The notes under the pieces are model-generated. The model had not been told where the DNA came from. It saw only the letters and a program-made list of their open reading frames with translations, and did no database searches. A DNA stretch of 63,623 nt, counting the filler, from Octopus bimaculoides (Eukaryota): assembly GCF_001194135.2 (NCBI RefSeq). It is 5 parts of 5 records of this genome, joined end to end, with 100 filler letters (N's around TTAATTAATTAA, not from the genome) between each part and the next. Parts side by side here need not be neighbours in the genome. Positions count along the whole stretch, not along the records: positions 1 to 14,976 come from NC_068986.1; 4 more parts are not named here. One strand, written 5' to 3'. Positions 7,473 through 14,132 of the stretch are shown here, one piece after another. The position numbers were made by a program, and so were the translations under genes. The stretch's first letter is position 1. The number at the start of each line of letters is the position of its first letter.

Positions 7473-9495
7473 ATATTGGTGCTACACCAACGAGGTCATT
7501 ACATGGTTTAAGGCCAATAGCGGTAGGGGTAGATCTTTAGATTTACCCAATTTGATATAGTGAATTTTTATCCATCTATATCAAGGGACCTCCTGTTAAA
7601 AGGCATTGGACTTTGCCAAGGCCCACACTGAAGTCAGTGATGAGGACATATGCATTATCATGCATGCCAGAAGAACCCTACTCTTCAGTAAGGGATCAGC
7701 TTAGGCCAAATGTACTAACCCAGAGGGCTCCCTCATCCTAAATACACTTAAAAAGAAATTCCCTTCAACTAGCTTTGGACTCTACAGAGATGACATGCTG
7801 GCAATATCAAGAAGGACCAATGGCCGGGCTCAGAAAGGACCTCACAAGCACCATGAACTCCCTTGGACTGAAGGTCACGATAGAGACTAACCTTGAAACA
7901 GTAGATTTCCTTGATGTGACCCTGGACCTGGTATGTGTTGCCTATAGGACCTTTAGAAAACCAAATGAGAAGCTGTCTTACATAAGCACAGGTTCCTGCC
8001 ATCCAGCCAGTGTACAGGAACCTAGTTAAGGGTGTCAGCATGAGCATCCCCAGCTTATCTTCAAGCAAAGAGATCTTTGATGCTGCTGCCCCTTACTACA
8101 ACCAGGCTCTGGCAGCCAGTGGTTTCAGGGATAGTATTAATTACATGCCAGACTGTAGAACCGCTCCCCCAACAGAAAGCACCACCAGAAAGTGCTGTGG
8201 TTCACCCTGCCCTTCTCTTTAAATATTAAGACCATAGTAGGTAAGATCTTCCTTAGTTAAGTTGATAAGCACTTTCCCCATATTAATAGATTCAATAAAA
8301 TATGTAATAGAAATACCCTGAGACTATCCTTTAGTTGTGCACCTAATGTAAAAATGATTTTAGTAGGTAGGCTACACCCAAGGCAGAGACAGGATGCTCA
8401 TGCAGGGGTAACACAACTTGTCCACTGAATAGCCAGTGCAACATGGAGGCAGTAACATACAAAGCAGAGGTAACAGCCACAGGACCAAATAGACAACCGA
8501 GTGTGCAGAAGTATGTGGGAGCAACAGAAGGCCCTTTTAGAACCCACTTTAACAACCACAAGTCCTCCTTCAATATCCCAGAGAGATGTAGCACAACAAC
8601 CCAAGCCAAACATGTTTGGCCTTTGAAAGAAAGCACCACAGAGTACAGCATAAAGTGGAAGATCCTGGAAAAATGCAAGTGGTACTTCAATAGCAGCAGG
8701 ATGTGCAGGTTATGCCTGGCTGAGAAGAGAGCACTTTTAAAGGGTACCCAATGCCCAGATGTTTACCTGGATAGCAGGAGTGAGGTGTTTAATCCCTGCC
8801 CACATGAAAGGAAGTACATCCTATCATACCTGCATCTCCAACATGACTGCAGTCACAGATCCCTGGCCTCGACCGTCCACCAATGCCCCCAGGATTGGCA
8901 AAGAATTTGACCAAAGCATACGTTAATGCACCCATGCATACACACACACACCTGTAAGGTGGACACACCACAAAACAGACTGTTTCTCACCATCCCCAAC
9001 ATATACCCCTTCACACATTGTACCCGACCACACACACATTACACACCACATGCTAACATAACCTCCACCCACGACCTTATCCTTTACAGAAAGAAAACAG
9101 ACCAACAAACACAGCCACATATGCCTACAACTCTGAAAACATTACGCACATGACACCACTACACATATCATACACCCCATCTCCACAAGAGCATCATATT
9201 TAATAATGCACACTTCCCCCATAAATGCTTTAAGATGGCTCTTACCGGCCTTACAGCAAACCCAACAAAAGGGCATAACTCCTAACCTAATCCCCAGGCC
9301 CTTTTTCATTTCACCACACTTTTTCAAATCAGCCGCTAATCAGTTGTGTTAATTCACCTCCGACAATAGAGAGCATTCACCATATTTCCTTCCATATCAG
9401 CTAACTCTGATGAGCGTAAGGTTATATAATCGGATTGTTACCTAACACTCCATTGTATTCATTGCATGAAACCAACTGGTAAGATAAGCCGTGAT
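7473..9495 (+). mobile_element. Penelope-like element, family B (5'-truncated, frameshifted)
   Basis: RT motifs FDIVNFYPS-like (~7555), GLKVTIETNLETVDFLDVTLDL and YNQALAASGF. GIY-YIG region YVGATEGPFRTHFNNHKSSF...CRLCLAEK in ORF 8443-8910. C/A-rich 3' UTR. Confidence 0.9.
9402..9486 (+). ncRNA. Minimal hammerhead ribozyme, partly degenerate
   Basis: taact-CTGATGA-gcgtaa...ttgcat-GAAAC-caactg-GTA-agata. Core boxes are intact. Stems I and II each have a mismatch, and stem III is near-palindromic (accaactggt). Confidence 0.65.
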
Positions 9496-9550
9496 GGATA
9501 TATATTATATATTTCAGATGATACATATGTGTGTGTGTGTGTATTATATA

Positions 9551-9591
<41 letters not shown>

Positions 9592-10088
9592 AATATATAT
9601 ATNNNNNNNNNNNNNNNNNNNNNNNNNNNNNNNNNNNNNNNNNNNNNNNNNNNNNNNNNNNNNNNNNNNNNNNNNNNNNNNNNNNNNNNNNNNNNNNNNN
9701 NNNNNNNNNNNNNNNNNNNNNNNNNNNNNNNNNNNNNNNNNNNNNNNNNNNNNNNNNNNNNNNNNNNNNNNNNNNNNNNNNNNNNNNNNNNNNNNNNNNN
9801 NNNNNNNNNNNNNNNNNNNNNNNNNNNNNNNNNNNNNNNNNNNNNNNNNNNNNNNNNNNNNNNNNNNNNNNNNNNNNNNNNNNNNNNNNNNNNNNNNNNN
9901 NNNNNNNNNNNNNNNNNNNNNNNNNNNNNNNNNNNNNNNNNNNNNNNNNNNNNNNNNNNNNNNNNNNNNNNNNNNNNNNNNNNNNNNNNNNNNNNNNNNN
10001 NNNNNNNNNNNNNNNNNNNNNNNNNNNNNNNNNNNNNNNNNNNNNNNNNNNNNNNNNNNNNNNNNNNNNNNNNNNNNNNNNNNNNNNN

Positions 10089-10389
10089 ACTCATCGTAAG
10101 GTAAATACCACCATGAGTGATATCCAAAATACAGTGGAGAAGGTTAGCCACTGGATTTGGTTAAAAAGAGACGATGAGCGATGGCTAGAGAAATATTGAG
10201 ATTTGTTTTTAATAACCAGTTGATCTAGCAAGCGGGGCCTCATATCAGTGAGGGTGTGCATTGATGCCGTCAAGAGGTAGGCCCCGAAACGGCACGCATT
10301 CCCTCCTGATGACCCCATACACTTGCTGGCTTCCGGTATGCAGAGTTCTCGACTGGTAGCACTTGCATGTGCGAGTTGTTTGCAAGACA
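10089..10389 (+). repeat. Copy of the 3' terminal ~300 bp of the downstream RLE element, joined directly to its 5' end
   Basis: Aligns to 13824-14132 (ORF end plus 3' UTR, both ending gcaagaca) with scattered substitutions and small indels. Left end is cut by an N gap. Confidence 0.9.
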
Positions 10390-13300
10390 TCTAAGACCTT
10401 GTGGTAGGTAGCCACTGACAGACCGGAAAGACGGTTAGGTATCTTGGAAAGACAAGAGGACTACTCGGAAAGACGAGCAGACAATAGGAAAGACTATCGA
10501 CACCAGGAGAGACTGGCGAAGGCTGCAGACTTACAATCCTCGCCTTTGTAATATATTGTAACAACTATGAAAGAGAATGACAGCCCCATGATTGACAGAG
10601 AAGGGGGAGTCGAGAAACAATCAAACCCAATTGACACGGATACGACCTTGGATACGAGTACGGCTATTCATTCGAACAGCGAACGAAGTGCAAACAACTT
10701 TGGATGCAAGCTGTGCTGTAGAACCTTTGCAACTATAAGAGGCTTGAAGATACATCAGGGAAAGACTTGTGAGAAGAAGACAGAGCAGTGTAGATCATCT
10801 GATCATAAAACACGTGGCAAATCATCCCCGGACGCAAACCATAGTGGATCGATAAATGTTACAGCAAAGACTTCTTCCCATCAGAAAACTGCAAGTCATG
10901 AGTCTGGTGTATCAGATAGTACTTGGAGGAGACCGAGGGTTTTGTGGCCTGCTGCTAATGAGAAAGAGAAATATAAAGAGTTTGAAAACAAGGTATGTCG
11001 AGCTCTTTATAAAATGACAGGCTCTACAGTGGAGAAACTGGGAAAATTAACATGCTCAATTTACAATACAGAGAAAGAATTGTTAGGACTGAAAGAGAAT
11101 ATCCGATTAGCGAAAGGAAAGTGTAGACCAAACAGGAGGATCAGGAAAATGAAACAGTTGAGGAAGGAAAAGACCAGCCTAAGAAAGCGGTGGAAATGTG
11201 CTGCAGAAGATGACAAACCTGGCCTCGCACTGCTGTATAACGATTTGAAAAGGAAATGTCGTTATGTGCAACAACATATACACCGATATGAGCATCGAAA
11301 GGAGAGTAAAAGGACTCGGGGGCAGTTTCTGAAGGACCCGTACAGGTTTACTAAGAAGCTATTCACTGAACCGAAGAGTGGTTCTTTATTGTGCACGAAA
11401 GAAGAATTGGATGCTCATGTCAAAGAAACCTACAGCAATCCGCACCGTAATCGGCCACTGCCACCTCTACATGGGCTAAACCATCTCTCAGAACCTGATA
11501 TCGAATTCCAAATTGGGGACATCACAGAGAGAGAGGTGAATGATTTCGTAAGAAAAGTTAGAGCAAAGAGTGCTCCAGGAGGTGATGGCGTCTCATATAA
11601 AGTCTATAAATATTGCAATCGTCTGCGAAAGAAGCTCTTTGTCCTACTCCGGCAACTGTGGCGTGAAGAGACTCTAGTAGAGGATTGGTGTAAGGCAGAA
11701 GGTATATACCTGCTGAAGGAGGCCAATGCAAAGACTTTAAAACAGTTCAGGCTGATATCCTTATTGAATGTGGAAGGCAAGAACTTTATGGGAATTCTTT
11801 CCAGGAGAACAGTGACACATTTACAAAATAATGGGTATGTTGATGAGTCTGTTCAAAAGGCCGGAATCCCCAGGATCCCTGGATGTGTTGAACATTGTTT
11901 TTCGATTTGGAAAGCAATCCAGGATGCCAAGGAGAAAATGAGAAGTCTGAACGTGGTATGGCTTGACCTAGCTAATGCACATGGCTCAGTGCCACACGAA
12001 TTACTGATAAGAGCCATGGACCACTTCCACATTCCAGACAAAGTGATCAAAATAATGAGGATATACTATGACAGTTTCGAAATGAGGTTTACAGCTGGAG
12101 ATTTTACAACAGATTGGCACCGATTGGAGACTGGCATTGCTGCTGGCTGTACAATATCTGTCACATGGTTTATCTTAGTTATGGAGTTGATTTTGAAAGC
12201 GGTGGATTTTTCGGTACAAATCGCCCATGTACAATCGCCTAAGAAAAGCCTTCATGGATGATGTGACACTTTTAGCTACAGATAAACAAGTCATGCAGAA
12301 TGCCCTCTTGAGATTAGATGAACTTGTGAGGTGGTCTAGGATGCGGTTTAGAGCAAAAAAGTCGCGTAGTCTGACATTTGTTAAGGGAGTGCAGAAAGAA
12401 TTCAAGTTTCAAATAACTGAAGAAACATTCCAACAGTCAAAGAAGAACCCGTCAAAAGCTTGGGGTGTGTATACGCTGGAACATTGTCAGATAGAAGTCG
12501 CGGAATGGAAATCATGAAACAAGCCGAGGCTGGATTTTCAGCGATTGATAACTTGAAGTTGCCAGGTAACTATAAAATTTGTTGCTTGCAGTTTGGCTTG
12601 TACCTGTAACTTTTGTGGCCACTTTTAATATATGAGGTAGCCTTGTCATGAGTTCAGATCATTGAACAAAAATGTAATATGTTCATTAGAAAGTGGCTAG
12701 GCCTACCTCAGATGTTGAACAGTTCAGCTCTTTATCGTAAAAGAGGTTCGTTGCAGTTACCACTAGCATCAATAGTCGAAATATACAAACTAGGGAAGAT
12801 ACGGATGGTGATGATGCTGAGAGAATTGAAGGATACGGAAATCAGGCGTAACCCACCAGAGGTGAAAACAGCCAGGAAGTCGAAAGCAGAAGCAGAGACT
12901 GATGACATCTTGTCTTCTCTTATACACAGAGATATGGTGGGTGCAACACAGAACCATTGGAGAGGACTTGGTTTTGGCGCAAATCAGTTCAAACCGTTTG
13001 CAGGTATGATGCGGAGCGAACGCAAATCTGTTGTTAGTAACAGCGTCAAAACAAGAGAAGCAAAGAGAAGAGAGCTTCATTTGATCCGATGTAGTCAACA
13101 AGGACAGATAAAGAGATGGGAAGAACATGTTGTTGAGAGGAAAGTACGTTGGGATGAAATATGGAAGTGGACGACATTGCGGCTAAGTTTTCTGATTTGT
13201 TCATCCTATGATGTTTTGCCGTCACCTAGGAATCTCGTAAGATGGAACGTCTCAGAGAATGACATATGCAAATGCAGAAAGGTCAGAACACTGAAACATA

Positions 13301-14132
13301 TTCTTTCCAACTGTTCCTTAGCATTGAATAGATAAACATGGAGACACAACCTGGTCCTGAAGGTTATCTTCAATGCTATGAAGAACCAAATTCATCTCAA
13401 CAACACAGAAAAAAACCGTTGAAAGAACCATCTGGAGATTTTATTACCTTCGTGCGCTCAGGTCAGTGGATCTGTTTCAAGAAAAAGAACAAGAAACTTC
13501 CTGTGAGAAATGAGAAGTGAAACGACTATTGGGAAGTGACTGCAGATTTACCTGGGTGCCAAGCATTCTTTCCCATCCCAGTTATGGAAAAAACGGACAT
13601 TTTAATGTGATGTGAAAGAAGGAAAGTTATAAATCTAGTCGAGTTAATGGTTCCTCATGAAGATAATATGAACGCCGCGCGGGCTCAAAAGATTGACCGT
13701 TATGTAAACCTCCTCGAGAAATGTGAAGATGCAGGCTGGAAAACGGAGCATTTTCCAACCGAAGTTGGATGTAGAAGGTTTGTAGGACACAGAGTGAGAC
13801 GACTGTTGTTATCGTTAGGCCTTACTCATCGTAAGGTAAATACCACCATGAGTGATATCCAAAATACAGTGGAGAAGGTTAACCACTGGATTTGGTTAAA
13901 AAGAGACGATGAGCGATGGCTAGAGAAATATTGAGCTTTGTTTTTAATAACCAGTTGATCTAGCAAACGGGGCCTCATATCAGTGAGGGGGGCCGGTGCG
14001 CATTGATGCCATCGAAAGGTAGGCCCCCGAAACGGCGCGCATTCTCTCCTGATGACCCCATACACTTGCTGGCTTCTGGTATGCAGAGTTCTCGACTGGT
14101 AGCACTTGCATGTGCGAGTTGTTTGCAAGACA
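10390..14132 (+). mobile_element. Near full-length restriction-like-endonuclease non-LTR retrotransposon (HERO/NeSL/R2-group-like), ORF disrupted
   Basis: N-terminal zinc finger CKLCCRTFATIRGLKIHQGKTC. RT motifs SAPGGDG, FRLISLLNVEGK, WLDLANAHGSVPH, GIAAGCTIS and AFMDDVT. C-terminal C-x-TLKHILSNC...TWRHN and RLE ELMVPHE...EVGCRRF. Several stops and frameshifts after ~12260. Confidence 0.9.
10422..10516 (+). other. Array of five short hairpins with a shared hexaloop in the 5' UTR of the RLE element
   Basis: accg-gaaaga-cggt (10422-35), tcttg-gaaaga-caaga (10442-57), ctcg-gaaaga-cgag (10464-77), atag-gaaaga-ctat (10484-97), ccag-gagaga-ctgg (10503-16). Confidence 0.85.

What the first reader, a model, noticed from the sequence alone, without database searches (positions are those of the whole stretch)
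10422..10516. Five tandem covarying hairpins with a shared G-GAAAGA-C loop in the 5' UTR of an RLE retrotransposon
Seen: five units about 20 nt apart. The stems all differ in sequence (accg/cggt, tcttg/caaga, ctcg/cgag, atag/ctat, ccag/ctgg) yet every one pairs perfectly. Loop GAAAGA (GAGAGA once) and the closing G-C pair are constant, and spacers are 5-6 nt, often containing gac. Sequence turnover with pairing retained is the signature of selection on structure, not simple tandem duplication. Inference: a multivalent RNA landing pad, analogous in principle to lambda boxB or MS2 arrays. It could serve cis-preferential loading of the element's own protein (basic tract RPNRRIRKMKQLRKEKTSLRKRWK near 11130-11190), translation control or 5'-end protection. 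I know of no description of such an array in HERO/NeSL-type elements, but I could not search.
Basis: partly seen in the sequence, partly recalled or inferred. Interest (0 to 1): 0.8.

Follow-up and report, generated by a model that had tools for sequence, protein, structure and literature searches.

The report
Conserved hairpin array in retrotransposon leader
Five small RNA hairpins with the same purine loop lie in the leader of a dead octopus-type retrotransposon copy; the array is conserved across this family from molluscs to fish, and the same hairpin design recurs in bacterial tmRNA, rRNA and tRNA spacers, phage gene leaders and a picorna-like virus, so it looks like an undescribed, widely reused RNA module.

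Summary
Window 10421-10516 holds five hairpins with different 4-5 bp stems, a constant G-GARAGA-C top, a 19-21 nt period and GAC-containing spacers.

They lie about 32 nt into the 177-nt 5' UTR of an R2-superfamily (restriction-like endonuclease, RLE) non-LTR retrotransposon. This copy is degenerate.

All nine related elements whose 5' region was fetched by protein similarity alone (31-60% aa identity; oyster, mussel, fish, amphioxus, metagenomes) carry the array at the same place. Three more were found by a DNA pattern. Stems covary: 86.8% of cells pair against 57.7% in shuffles.

The same grammar (GAC spacer, variable stem, GGAAAGAC) also occurs in Acidimicrobiia tmRNAs, rRNA-operon leader and spacer, tRNA clusters, phage head-gene leaders and a picorna-like virus 5' UTR. 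Three composition-matched control cores gave no such arrays. Rfam and the searched literature hold no match.

So selection on RNA structure is supported. Binding of the element's own protein is untested, and the cross-domain recurrence makes it less likely. My best guess is a multivalent platform or insulator next to the start codon that works with the translation apparatus (confidence about 0.35). The partner is unknown.

The parts
10421..10436 (+). Hairpin U1: stem (g)accg/cggt(t), loop GAAAGA, core GGAAAGAC at 10425-10432
   Evidence: 23.6 bits
10442..10457 (+). Hairpin U2: stem tcttg/caaga, loop GAAAGA, core at 10446-10453. The stem is identical in relative L001.
10464..10477 (+). Hairpin U3: stem ctcg/cgag, loop GAAAGA (GAGAGA in L001), core at 10467-10474
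10484..10497 (+). Hairpin U4: stem atag/ctat, loop GAAAGA, core at 10487-10494. L001 has atgg/ccat, a compensatory A-T to G-C change.
10503..10516 (+). Hairpin U5: stem ccag/ctgg, loop GAGAGA, core at 10506-10513
   Evidence: 13.7 bits
10401..10415 (+). 'Hairpin 0' before the array: gtgg-taggtag-ccac followed by tgac. Relatives have GUGG/CCAC or CUGG/CCAG with varied loops at the same place.
   Evidence: read; no statistics run
10390..10566 (+). 5' UTR of the full-length unit. It begins where the 3'-end homology stops (10389|10390) and runs to the first ATG at 10567.
10584..10607 (+). Start-codon-proximal hairpin CCCC...GAGA...GGGG(G). It is conserved as RNA in all relatives and usually lies directly before the AUG. 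Here it is just inside the ORF and contains a second AUG at 10588.
   Evidence: read; amino acids and spacing differ between loci while the C-run, GAGA and G-run are kept
10567..13934 (+). Degenerate ORF: C2H2 finger, basic tract, reverse transcriptase (RT), CCHC finger and PD..E..K restriction-like endonuclease. It has frame changes near 12250, 12361-12424 and 13410, and 5 in-frame stops in the C-terminal half.
13935..14132 (+). 3' UTR, including the family-conserved block CGAAAC...CUGAUGA (14028-14061). The element ends near 14132.
10089..10389 (+). Second copy (97-98% identical) of the last ~100 nt of the ORF plus the 3' UTR, joined head-to-tail to the 5' UTR. It is cut upstream by the assembly gap N 9603-10088.

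Best explanation
The array is a conserved cis-acting element of the sense RNA of an R2-superfamily (RLE) retrotransposon family. It consists of 3-11 short hairpins (4-6 bp). Each presents the purine hexaloop GARAGA, and the hairpins are separated by GAC-containing spacers. The array sits between the RNA 5' end and the start codon.

Shown:
- The structure itself.
- Its conservation and covariation across the family.
- Its strand.
- Its position.
- That the same module is reused in unrelated RNAs of bacteria, phages and a picorna-like virus.

Inferred:
- The module recurs next to start codons of strongly expressed or cap-independent messages (phage head genes, Chloroflexota secreted-protein genes, picorna-like ORF1).
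- It also recurs in RNAs that work on or are built into ribosomes (tmRNA, pre-rRNA).
- I therefore think it acts in the cytoplasm as a multivalent, locally folding platform.
- The platform would engage a ubiquitous component of the translation or RNA-handling machinery, and at the same time keep the initiation region free of long-range pairing.
- The effect would be to promote ribosome loading on an element RNA that may lack a normal cap, for example one derived from tandem or read-through transcripts.

The partner is not identified.
For: Structure:
- Five perfect hairpins with fold z = -4.2.
- Core enrichment of 7 against 0.66 expected.

Family conservation:
- The array sits at the same 5' UTR position in L001.
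- It is also there in L243-L246 and L247-L249. All of these were fetched by protein similarity only, at 31-60% aa identity.
- It is also present in L046, L079 and L102, found by the DNA pattern.

Covariation:
- 44 distinct units: 86.8% of cells paired against 57.7% in shuffles.
- Covariation score 0.784 against 0.208 (0 of 500 shuffles reach it); slid controls 0.05-0.25.
- 36 of 44 units have at least 3 pairs beyond the closing G-C, against a shuffled mean of 5.4.

Spacers: GAC is present in 94% of inter-core segments in the family and 73% in bacterial or phage hairpin arrays, against about 20% expected.

Specificity of the core in viral contigs: 21 of 67 arrays are hairpin-flanked (19 with different arms), against 0/75, 0/164 and 2/22 trivial repeats for three composition-matched cores.

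Contexts:
- tmRNA.
- 23S leader and tRNA clusters.
- rrn leader.
- Phage: array, then ribosome-binding site, then a PHROG 13908 gene, then the capsid gene.
- Picorna-like virus: array about 16 nt before the ORF1 AUG.

The RNA-virus case rules out a purely DNA-level, RNA-polymerase-level or nuclear explanation for the module as such.
Against: - No binding, translation or stability experiment exists, so function is inferred from context only.
- tRNA-cluster and rRNA-spacer occurrences are not next to start codons, and in tmRNA the array lies after the tag reading frame.
- In the retrotransposons the array ends 50-150 nt before the AUG, further away than in the phages and the virus.
- No sequence complementary to the loop was found in the 16S or 23S rRNA of one array-bearing bacterium, so direct rRNA pairing is not supported.
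- The bacterial, phage and virus cases were found with a pattern taken from this window. They show recurrence of this exact core, not that all contexts share one function.
- Convergence on a simple stable hairpin cannot be excluded.
Confidence: 0.35

Rival explanations
1. The array is a multivalent landing pad for the element's own protein. It would be the functional counterpart of the R2 5' protein-binding motif (PBM) RNA, marking full-length RNA in cis and coordinating the late steps of integration.
For: - In R2, a structured 5' RNA segment binds the element's protein and controls downstream DNA binding and second-strand cleavage (PMC6895275).
- The array is close to the RNA 5' end and is conserved throughout the family.
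- The ORF has a C2H2 finger, a long basic tract and a CCHC finger.
- Repeat number varies from 3 to 11, as expected for additive binding sites.
Against: The identical module (loop, closing pair, GAC spacer, period) occurs in bacterial tmRNA, rRNA and tRNA spacers, phage leaders and a picorna-like virus, none of which encodes such a protein. Those would all have to be coincidences. The R2 5' PBM is a pseudoknotted domain, not an array of mini-hairpins. No binding test was possible.
Confidence: 0.2
2. The module needs no specific partner. It is an intrinsically well-behaved structural unit: a compact purine hexaloop on a short stem, with loops and spacers that cannot pair with each other. Evolution reuses it as a nuclease-resistant, non-interfering spacer. 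In the element it would protect the 5' end from exonuclease and prevent misfolding.
For: - In Acidimicrobiia tmRNA three such hairpins lie downstream of the tag reading frame. From memory that is the region where pseudoknots usually lie, and they mainly serve folding and stability.
- Occurrences in spacers of rRNA and tRNA precursors.
- Loops and spacers are almost only G, A and C.
- The array starts about 32 nt from the RNA 5' end in the window and in L001.
Against: Passive structure does not explain why the same 6-nt loop and the GAC spacer are kept from bacteria to chordates while the stems change freely, nor why composition-matched cores give no hairpin arrays. Stems of 4-5 bp are weak barriers. 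In the phages the array is internal to a long late transcript rather than at its 5' end.
Confidence: 0.2
3. The repeats act as DNA. They would form part of the internal promoter of the element: tandem GGAA/GAAA or AGAC(G) boxes about two helical turns apart for a transcription factor or core-promoter factor, like the monomers of the mouse L1 5' UTR.
For: Non-LTR elements often carry internal promoters in the 5' UTR, and the period of 19-21 bp is near two turns of DNA (established knowledge). The GGAAAGAC core is asymmetric, like a factor-binding site.
Against: - A DNA site does not need its variable flanks to be reverse complements, yet 98%, 98% and 86% of the first three flanking positions pair.
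- The same module lies inside RNA genes in the RNA sense orientation.
- It also lies in an RNA virus genome.
Confidence: 0.05
4. The hairpins mimic, or are substrates related to, the 23S rRNA segment 2056-2063 (GGAAAGAC, the A2058 site). Alternatively they are adenine-methylation sites, since GAC is the core of the animal m6A motif. They would act through an RNA-modifying or rRNA-binding protein.
For: - GGAAAGAC is identical to E. coli 23S 2056-2063.
- Short hairpins carrying this segment are substrates of Erm methyltransferases and ligands of TLR13 (PMC7449152; PMC12887398).
- The 23S sequence upstream reads GACAGGAC-GGAAAGAC, which resembles a spacer plus unit.
- The 23S of an array-bearing bacterium has the 8-mer once, at the expected place.
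Against: - An 8-mer match to a 2.9-kb rRNA is weak evidence on its own.
- The register differs: in 23S, G2057 closes helix 73, whereas here the preceding G pairs with the C.
- Family members tolerate loops such as GAAAGU, GAAAAG, GGAAGA and GAACAG.
- Nothing was tested.
Confidence: 0.07
5. It is a neutral minisatellite: a tandem duplication of one palindromic unit with no function.
For: Tandem Repeats Finder reports a 19-nt repeat at 10467-10514. Some arrays elsewhere (L044, L112, L169) are near-identical tandem copies.
Against: The five stems share no sequence. The array is kept at one position in elements only 31% identical in protein, with compensatory changes. Control cores form tandem repeats but not hairpins.
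Confidence: 0.02

Closest known systems
R2 retrotransposon 5' RNA elements (5' protein-binding motif; HDV-like ribozyme)
   Same: Structured, conserved RNA at the 5' end of an RLE retrotransposon transcript, evolving under structural constraint. In R2 it binds the element protein and takes part in non-canonical expression (PMC6895275; PMC13580325).
   Different: R2 uses a large pseudoknotted domain and a ribozyme fold. Here there is a repetitive array of 14-16-nt hairpins with one constant loop. No Rfam ribozyme or other family matches. The same hairpin also occurs outside retroelements.
Lambda-type N/boxB (nut) hairpins and engineered MS2/PP7/boxB arrays
   Same: A short stem with free sequence under a constant purine-rich loop beginning GA, read by a peptide or protein. 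It is used in several copies, and occurs in bacteria and phages, including leader regions.
   Different: From memory, boxB is a pentaloop with a GNRA-like fold, occurs singly and is paired with boxA. Here the loop has six bases (GARAGA), a GAC spacer is conserved, no boxA was seen, there are 3-11 copies, and no N-like protein is known. Natural multi-copy arrays of this kind are not described.
CsrB/RsmZ-type sponge RNAs and MAT2A 3' UTR METTL16 hairpins
   Same: Natural RNAs with many small hairpins that share a loop motif over variable stems and act by binding several copies of one protein.
   Different: From memory, those loop motifs are ANGGA and UACAGAGAA, which differ from GARAGA. They have no fixed 19-23-nt period or GAC spacer, and each is restricted to one lineage. 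This module spans bacteria, phages, a picorna-like virus and animal retrotransposons.
ANTAR dual-hexaloop and guanidine-II (mini-ykkC) tandem mini-hairpins
   Same: Very small hairpins with covarying stems and constant loops that lie upstream of bacterial genes and are functional despite their size.
   Different: ANTAR loops need A at position 1 and G at position 4 (PMC3369931); here position 1 is G and position 4 is A. Both known motifs have exactly two hairpins, and (from memory) guanidine-II has ACGR tetraloops.
Tandem 5' UTR monomers of mouse L1
   Same: Tandem repeats in the 5' UTR of a non-LTR retrotransposon, with variable copy number.
   Different: L1 monomers are about 200 bp and act as DNA promoters (from memory). 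Here the units are 20 nt and the constraint is on RNA pairing.

Membership tests
R2-superfamily (RLE) non-LTR retrotransposon (the host element) | Reverse transcriptase domain in a single long ORF | tested here: met
   RVT_1 E = 3e-9 in 10567-12261 and its continuation in 12227-12517. There are 138 homologues, all RT proteins of animals.
R2-superfamily (RLE) non-LTR retrotransposon (the host element) | C-terminal CCHC finger followed by a PD-(D/E)xK restriction-like endonuclease | tested here: met
   Motifs C-x-C...H...C and KKPD...ELTVPHE...K were read in the intact relative L001 and, broken, in the window. Weak PDB hits to R2 proteins 9nl3_A and 9dou_A, E about 1e-3. zf-RVT E = 6e-4, below the Pfam cut-off.
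R2-superfamily (RLE) non-LTR retrotransposon (the host element) | Assignment to the HERO or NeSL clade by RT phylogeny | not tested
   No reference HERO or NeSL sequences were at hand. The taxon spread (molluscs, fish, amphioxus, brittle star) fits HERO as I remember it.
R2 5' protein-binding motif RNA | Binds the element-encoded protein | not testable with these tools
   Needs EMSA or CLIP.
R2 5' protein-binding motif RNA | Pseudoknotted domain near the 5' end or ORF start | tested here: not met
   The fold is five independent hairpins. The position near the 5' end does fit.
Lambda N / boxB | Five-base GNRA-like loop on a 5-bp stem, next to boxA | tested here: not met
   The loop is six bases, GARAGA. 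No boxA-like sequence was seen beside the arrays read.
ANTAR target RNA | Two hairpins with hexaloops carrying A at position 1 and G at position 4 | tested here: not met
   The loop is G1 A2 R3 A4 G5 A6, and there are 3-11 hairpins. Criterion taken from PMC3369931.
CsrA/RsmE-binding sponge hairpins | GGA in the centre of the loop (ANGGA) | tested here: not met
   GGA here spans the closing G and the first two loop bases. The arrays occur in Acidimicrobiia and Bacteroidales, which as far as I recall lack CsrA.
Any Rfam 15 family | Covariance-model match at the gathering score or at E <= 1 | tested here: not met
   No match over the arrays in the window, in 19 loci at gathering score or in 9 loci at E <= 1.
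Hammerhead ribozyme (for the 3' UTR block CGAAAC...CUGAUGA) | Core boxes in the order CUGANGA - helix II - GAAA - helix III - UH, with pairing helices | tested here: not met
   The order is GAAAC then CUGAUGA. No helix II pairing is possible in any permutation checked by hand (sequences). Rfam is negative. The alignment fold was inconclusive.
23S rRNA A2058-region mimic / Erm substrate | Helix-73-like stem closed by G2057-C2611 with A2058 unpaired | tested here: inconclusive
   The 8-mer is identical, but the pairing register differs and relatives tolerate other loops.

The most novel reading that the evidence does not exclude
The unit 'GAC spacer + variable 4-6 bp stem + G-GARAGA-C' is a single ancient RNA module used in all three settings: cellular RNAs of bacteria (tmRNA, pre-rRNA, pre-tRNA), viruses (phage late leaders, a picorna-like 5' UTR) and animal retrotransposons. 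It would persist because it is read by a universally conserved component of the ribosome or translation machinery. One possibility is that it mimics the peptidyl-transferase-centre segment GGAAAGAC of large-subunit rRNA. It would then be a cross-domain 'ribosome handle' missed by motif surveys because each unit is so small.
Probability: 0.2. Interest if true: 0.92.

Novelty: new variant of a known kind. Interest (0 to 1): 0.8.

Why it matters
For retrotransposon biology, it adds a clearly constrained 5' UTR RNA element to a poorly studied branch of the R2 superfamily. That superfamily is now of practical interest for gene insertion. How these RNAs are translated and how their 5' ends are handled are open questions. 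The R2 review read here states that R2 protein is translated by an unknown, non-canonical mechanism (PMC13580325).

For RNA biology, a 20-nt unit with one loop, one spacer triplet and free stems turns up in:
- Acidimicrobiia tmRNA,
- rRNA and tRNA operon spacers,
- phage head-gene leaders,
- a picorna-like virus,
- animal retrotransposons.

It is absent from Rfam. If these share a partner, the partner must be very widely conserved and is easy to fish for, because the array is multivalent and small. If they do not, this is an unusually precise case of convergence on one mini-hairpin. Either way the module could serve as a compact natural tag or insulator.

Tried and rejected
1. Known RNA families. 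Rfam scans of the window and of 28 array-bearing loci found nothing over the arrays.

2. Literature. Searches for GGAAAGAC with hairpin, tandem or stem-loop, for a GAAAGA hexaloop, for HERO/NeSL, and for tandem hairpins in non-LTR elements gave no description of the array.

3. Hammerhead or other ribozyme in the conserved 3' UTR block. The box order and helix II pairing fail, Rfam is negative, and the alignment fold was uninformative because the alignment is poor.

4. Pairing of the loop with rRNA. There is no GUCUUUCC or close variant in the 16S or 23S of an array-bearing Roseobacter-group genome.

5. ANTAR, CsrA and boxB membership. The loop rules are not met.

6. Neutral tandem repeat. Rejected by the family comparison and by control cores.

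7. Closer copies from the octopus genome. The only near relative retrieved (L002, O. bimaculoides, 91% aa identity) is 5'-truncated and has no UTR. The Aplysia gene model was too long to fetch.

8. Naming the phage gene downstream of the arrays. It matches PHROG 13908 (function unknown) and no Pfam family. Only gene order (terminase, portal, small Prp-like protein, array, this gene, capsid-like gene with the same N-terminal LNLRLFDG motif) suggests a scaffold role. The names for the neighbouring genes come from my reading of the sequences and were not tested.
Full report
**1. The observation**

The sequence at 10421-10516 contains five units of the form stem, GARAGA, stem:
- accg/cggt
- tcttg/caaga
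- ctcg/cgag
- atag/ctat
- ccag/ctgg

The 8-mer GGARAGAC starts at 10425, 10446, 10467, 10487 and 10506. The window holds 7 copies against 0.66 expected, and none of 200 shuffles reached 7.

The minimum-free-energy and centroid folds of 10410-10530 show all five hairpins, with z = -4.2. The opposite strand folds as well, z = -4.6, as palindromes must. Strand therefore has to be decided by the conserved loop and by context.

Tandem Repeats Finder sees only a weak 19-nt repeat over the last 2.5 units, because the stems share no sequence. A covariance model of one unit finds these five sites and one more inside the ORF at 10753-10772. That site encodes IHQGKTC and is not present in the closest full-length relative.

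**2. The element**

The reading frame continues, broken, to a stop at 13932-13934.

Compared with the intact relative L001, this copy has frame changes near 12250, 12361-12424 and 13410, and five in-frame stops. The C-terminal part carries a CCHC finger and a PD...E.T...K restriction-like endonuclease motif. It matches solved R2 proteins weakly. This is therefore a dead copy of an R2-superfamily (RLE) non-LTR retrotransposon.

The nearest protein in the databases is from Octopus bimaculoides, at 91% identity over a 5'-truncated copy.

Segment 10089-10389 repeats 13824-14132 at 97-98% identity. That is the end of the ORF plus the 3' UTR, placed directly in front of the 5' UTR. An assembly gap (N 9603-10088) cuts it upstream.

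Relatives also have a piece of the 3' end in front of the 5' UTR:
- about 100 nt in L001, measured by homology;
- roughly 100-150 nt in the oyster copy L245, judged by eye where an unrelated sequence upstream gives way to the conserved 3' UTR block;
- longer pieces in the others.

This fits tandem copies or end-to-end template jumping, which R2-type reverse transcriptases are known to do (PMC6895275). I did not test that.

The junction defines the unit's 5' end at about 10390. The 5' UTR is therefore 177 nt, and the array starts about 32 nt into it.

**3. Conservation in the family**

Nine relatives were fetched by protein similarity alone:
- L001 (60% aa identity)
- L243 (48%)
- L249 (45%)
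- L244 (36%)
- L245, the oyster Saccostrea (35%)
- L248, the mussel Mytilus (37%)
- L247, the fish Labeo (34%)
- L246, the amphioxus Branchiostoma (31%)
- L002 (5'-truncated, so no UTR)

Every one that includes the 5' region has 3-6 such hairpins between a 'hairpin 0' and the start codon. Three further elements (L046, L079, L102; 27-45% identity) came from a DNA pattern scan and have 6-11 hairpins.

Loops in the distant members vary within a purine theme: GAAAGA, GAGAGA, GAAAGU, GAAAAG, GGAAGA and GAACAG(U/G). The closing pair is usually G-C but can be A-U or U-A. Spacers read (U/G)GAC(A).

Between the window and L001:
- Unit 2 has an identical stem and loop, and unit 3 has the same stem with one loop base changed (GAAAGA against GAGAGA).
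- Unit 1 has a wholly different paired stem (accg/cggt against atcctg/caggat).
- Unit 4 shows a compensatory change (atag/ctat against atgg/ccat).
- Unit 5 is partly broken in L001.

**4. Statistics**

For 44 distinct units defined only by the core, the first three positions outside the closing pair are paired in 98%, 98% and 86% of units. 36 of 44 units have all three pairs, against a shuffled mean of 5.4 and a maximum of 14 in 10,000 shuffles.

On the alignment, 86.8% of cells pair against 57.7% in shuffles. The covariation score is 0.784 against 0.208 (0 of 500 shuffles reach it). Sliding the partner by 1-3 columns drops the score to 0.05-0.25. Each variable pair shows five or six pair types.

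The units are a mix of paralogues and orthologues, so these numbers measure constraint on the unit rather than independent events at one site.

**5. The module outside retroelements**

The pattern GGAAAGAC-N10-15-GGARAGAC-N10-15-GGARAGAC was scanned over metagenome, prokaryotic-genome and viral collections. About a third of the arrays have the same architecture, although neither the stems nor the spacer were part of the pattern. The contexts are:

(a) tmRNA genes of Acidimicrobiia. Three hairpins lie downstream of the tag reading frame. There are 63 arrays and 77 distinct units, of which 57 have at least 3 extra pairs, against 9.4 in shuffles.

(b) The leader of an rRNA operon in Roseobacter-group bacteria, about 370-440 nt before 16S. 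Also the spacer about 55 nt before 23S in Bacteroidales.

(c) tRNA gene clusters.

(d) The leaders of genes for signal-peptide proteins in Chloroflexota.

(e) Many phages, directly before the ribosome-binding site of a PHROG 13908 gene. That gene lies between a small Prp-like gene and the capsid gene, so it is probably the scaffold gene.

(f) A 9.5-kb dicistronic picorna-like virus genome. Four hairpins end about 16 nt before the ORF1 start codon, at the end of an 880-nt 5' UTR.

In all annotated cases the GGAAAGAC strand is the RNA sense strand.

GAC is present in 94% of inter-core segments in the retroelement family and in 73% of those in the bacterial and phage hairpin arrays, against about 20% expected.

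As a control, three cores with the same composition were scanned over the same viral collection:

| Core | Tandem arrays | Hairpin-flanked arrays |
|---|---|---|
| GGARAGAC (real) | 67 | 21 (19 with different arms) |
| GAAGRGAC | 75 | 0 |
| GGAGARAC | 164 | 0 |
| GARAGGAC | 22 | 2 (both trivial 10-nt repeats) |

**6. What it is not**

- No Rfam family matches.
- It is not an ANTAR target: the loop rule A1/G4 is not met.
- It is not a CsrA-type or boxB hairpin by loop rule.
- The conserved 3' UTR block CGAAAC...CUGAUGA recalls hammerhead boxes but cannot form the hammerhead helices.
- No paper describing the array was found.

The 8-mer equals E. coli 23S rRNA 2056-2063, the A2058 macrolide, Erm and TLR13 site. 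I keep this as a lead only.

**7. Mechanism**

Firm conclusions:
- This is an RNA-level, sense-strand, conserved, multivalent structure.
- The constraint falls on pairing, on the loop and on the spacer triplet, not on stem sequence.

Consequences of the contexts:
- The occurrence in an RNA virus and inside mature tmRNA excludes explanations that need DNA, a DNA-dependent RNA polymerase or the nucleus for the module as such.
- The recurrence beside start codons of heavily expressed or cap-independent messages, and in RNAs of the translation system, makes a translation-linked role the best single guess (0.35).
- That role would be recruitment of a ubiquitous factor or ribosomal component, combined with local insulation of the initiation region.
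It has a precedent in the R2 5' protein-binding motif.
- A partner-free structural or stability module is comparably likely (0.2).
- A DNA promoter role, an rRNA mimic or methylation role, and a neutral repeat are minor alternatives.

**8. Novelty and verdict**

The array in this retrotransposon family appears to be undescribed. The cross-domain recurrence of the same 20-nt unit appears to be undescribed too. The kind of thing (small hairpins with a constant loop in several copies) is known, so I rate it a new variant of a known kind with high interest.

Limits:
- Function is inferred.
- The non-retroelement cases were ascertained with this window's own core.
- Clade assignment (HERO or NeSL) was not tested.

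Noticed in passing
window 10089-10389 and 13824-14132; N run 9603-10088: The last ~100 nt of the ORF plus the whole 3' UTR are repeated (97-98% identical) directly in front of the 5' UTR, cut upstream by an assembly gap. Relatives also carry a 3'-end piece of variable length there (about 100 nt in L001, roughly 100-150 nt by eye in L245, longer in others). This suggests tandem copies or end-to-end template jumping.
   Followed up: partly
window 13960-14070 (and 10225-10320); L001 4330-4430; L243-L249, L102: The 3' UTR block with the boxes CGAAAC and CUGAUGA is conserved across the whole family, even where the surrounding sequence is not. It resembles hammerhead core boxes but fails the hammerhead topology. 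In the window it can form a long irregular stem. It may be the RT-binding 3' element.
   Followed up: partly
window 10584-10607; same position in L001, L102, L244-L248: A hairpin with a C4-5 run, an inner GAGA or GAAA, and a G4-5 run lies at or just before the start codon in all family members. The encoded amino acids and the spacing differ, so the conservation looks like RNA. In most relatives the AUG follows it directly (GGGGGAGGAUG).
   Followed up: partly
window 10401-15; L245 ~2825-2840, L248, L246, L244, L247, L102: A 'hairpin 0' (GUGG/CCAC or CUGG/CCAG, with a variable loop that is GAAA in oyster and mussel) followed by UGAC always precedes the array.
   Followed up: no
L003 10132-10178 within tmRNA 9926-10304; about 60 further loci (L005, L015, L133-L241): tmRNAs of Acidimicrobiia carry three GGAAAGAC hairpins with covarying 5-7 bp stems downstream of the tag reading frame. 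From memory, that is where pseudoknots usually lie.
   Followed up: partly
L233 6361-6429 (minus strand); L124, L130, L174, L207; L014 254-302; L192: Four to six such hairpins lie in the rRNA-operon leader of Roseobacter-group bacteria, about 370-440 nt before 16S. Three lie about 55 nt before 23S in Bacteroidales.
   Followed up: partly
L294 (minus strand, reverse-complement coordinates 8864-8960), L259, L303, L254, L276, L277, L283, L288, L290, L108, L013, L175: In many phages the array lies just before the ribosome-binding site of a PHROG 13908 gene. Gene order is terminase, portal, small Prp-like protein, array, this gene, capsid-like gene. This gene and the capsid-like gene both begin with ...LNLRLFDGEGG, which I recognise from memory as a Prp protease cleavage motif shared with ribosomal protein L27.
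   Followed up: partly
L308 787-865 (ORF1 starts at 881): A dicistronic picorna-like virus genome from a metatranscriptome has four of these hairpins at the very end of its 880-nt 5' UTR. None lie in the intergenic region before ORF2.
   Followed up: partly
L044 1122-1213, L112, L106, L041, L256: Arrays (some nearly identical tandem copies) lie between tRNA genes in dense tRNA clusters of low-GC contigs, possibly from phages.
   Followed up: no
window 10425-10432 and the other cores: GGAAAGAC is identical to E. coli 23S rRNA 2056-2063 (the A2058 Erm, macrolide and TLR13 site). The rRNA reads GACAGGAC just upstream, which is similar to a spacer plus stem.
   Followed up: partly
window 10753-10772: A sixth unit-like site (21.4 bits) lies inside the ORF in the codons for IHQGKTC of the zinc finger. 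The core is absent at this place in L001, so it is probably chance.
   Followed up: partly
window 9521-9592: A weak mir-297 match (41 bits against a gathering score of 90) lies on a TG/TA dinucleotide repeat next to the assembly gap. It is almost certainly a low-complexity artefact. The window holds many TA/TG/AC microsatellites and three N gaps.
   Followed up: no
L031 (minus strand, reverse-complement coordinates 1714-2185), L070, L048, L099/L270, L120, L306: Further metagenome and 'giant-virus bin' contigs carry long arrays (up to 11 units) with no RT detected on the short contig. L070 has two copies of an L046-like leader about 990 nt apart.
   Followed up: no
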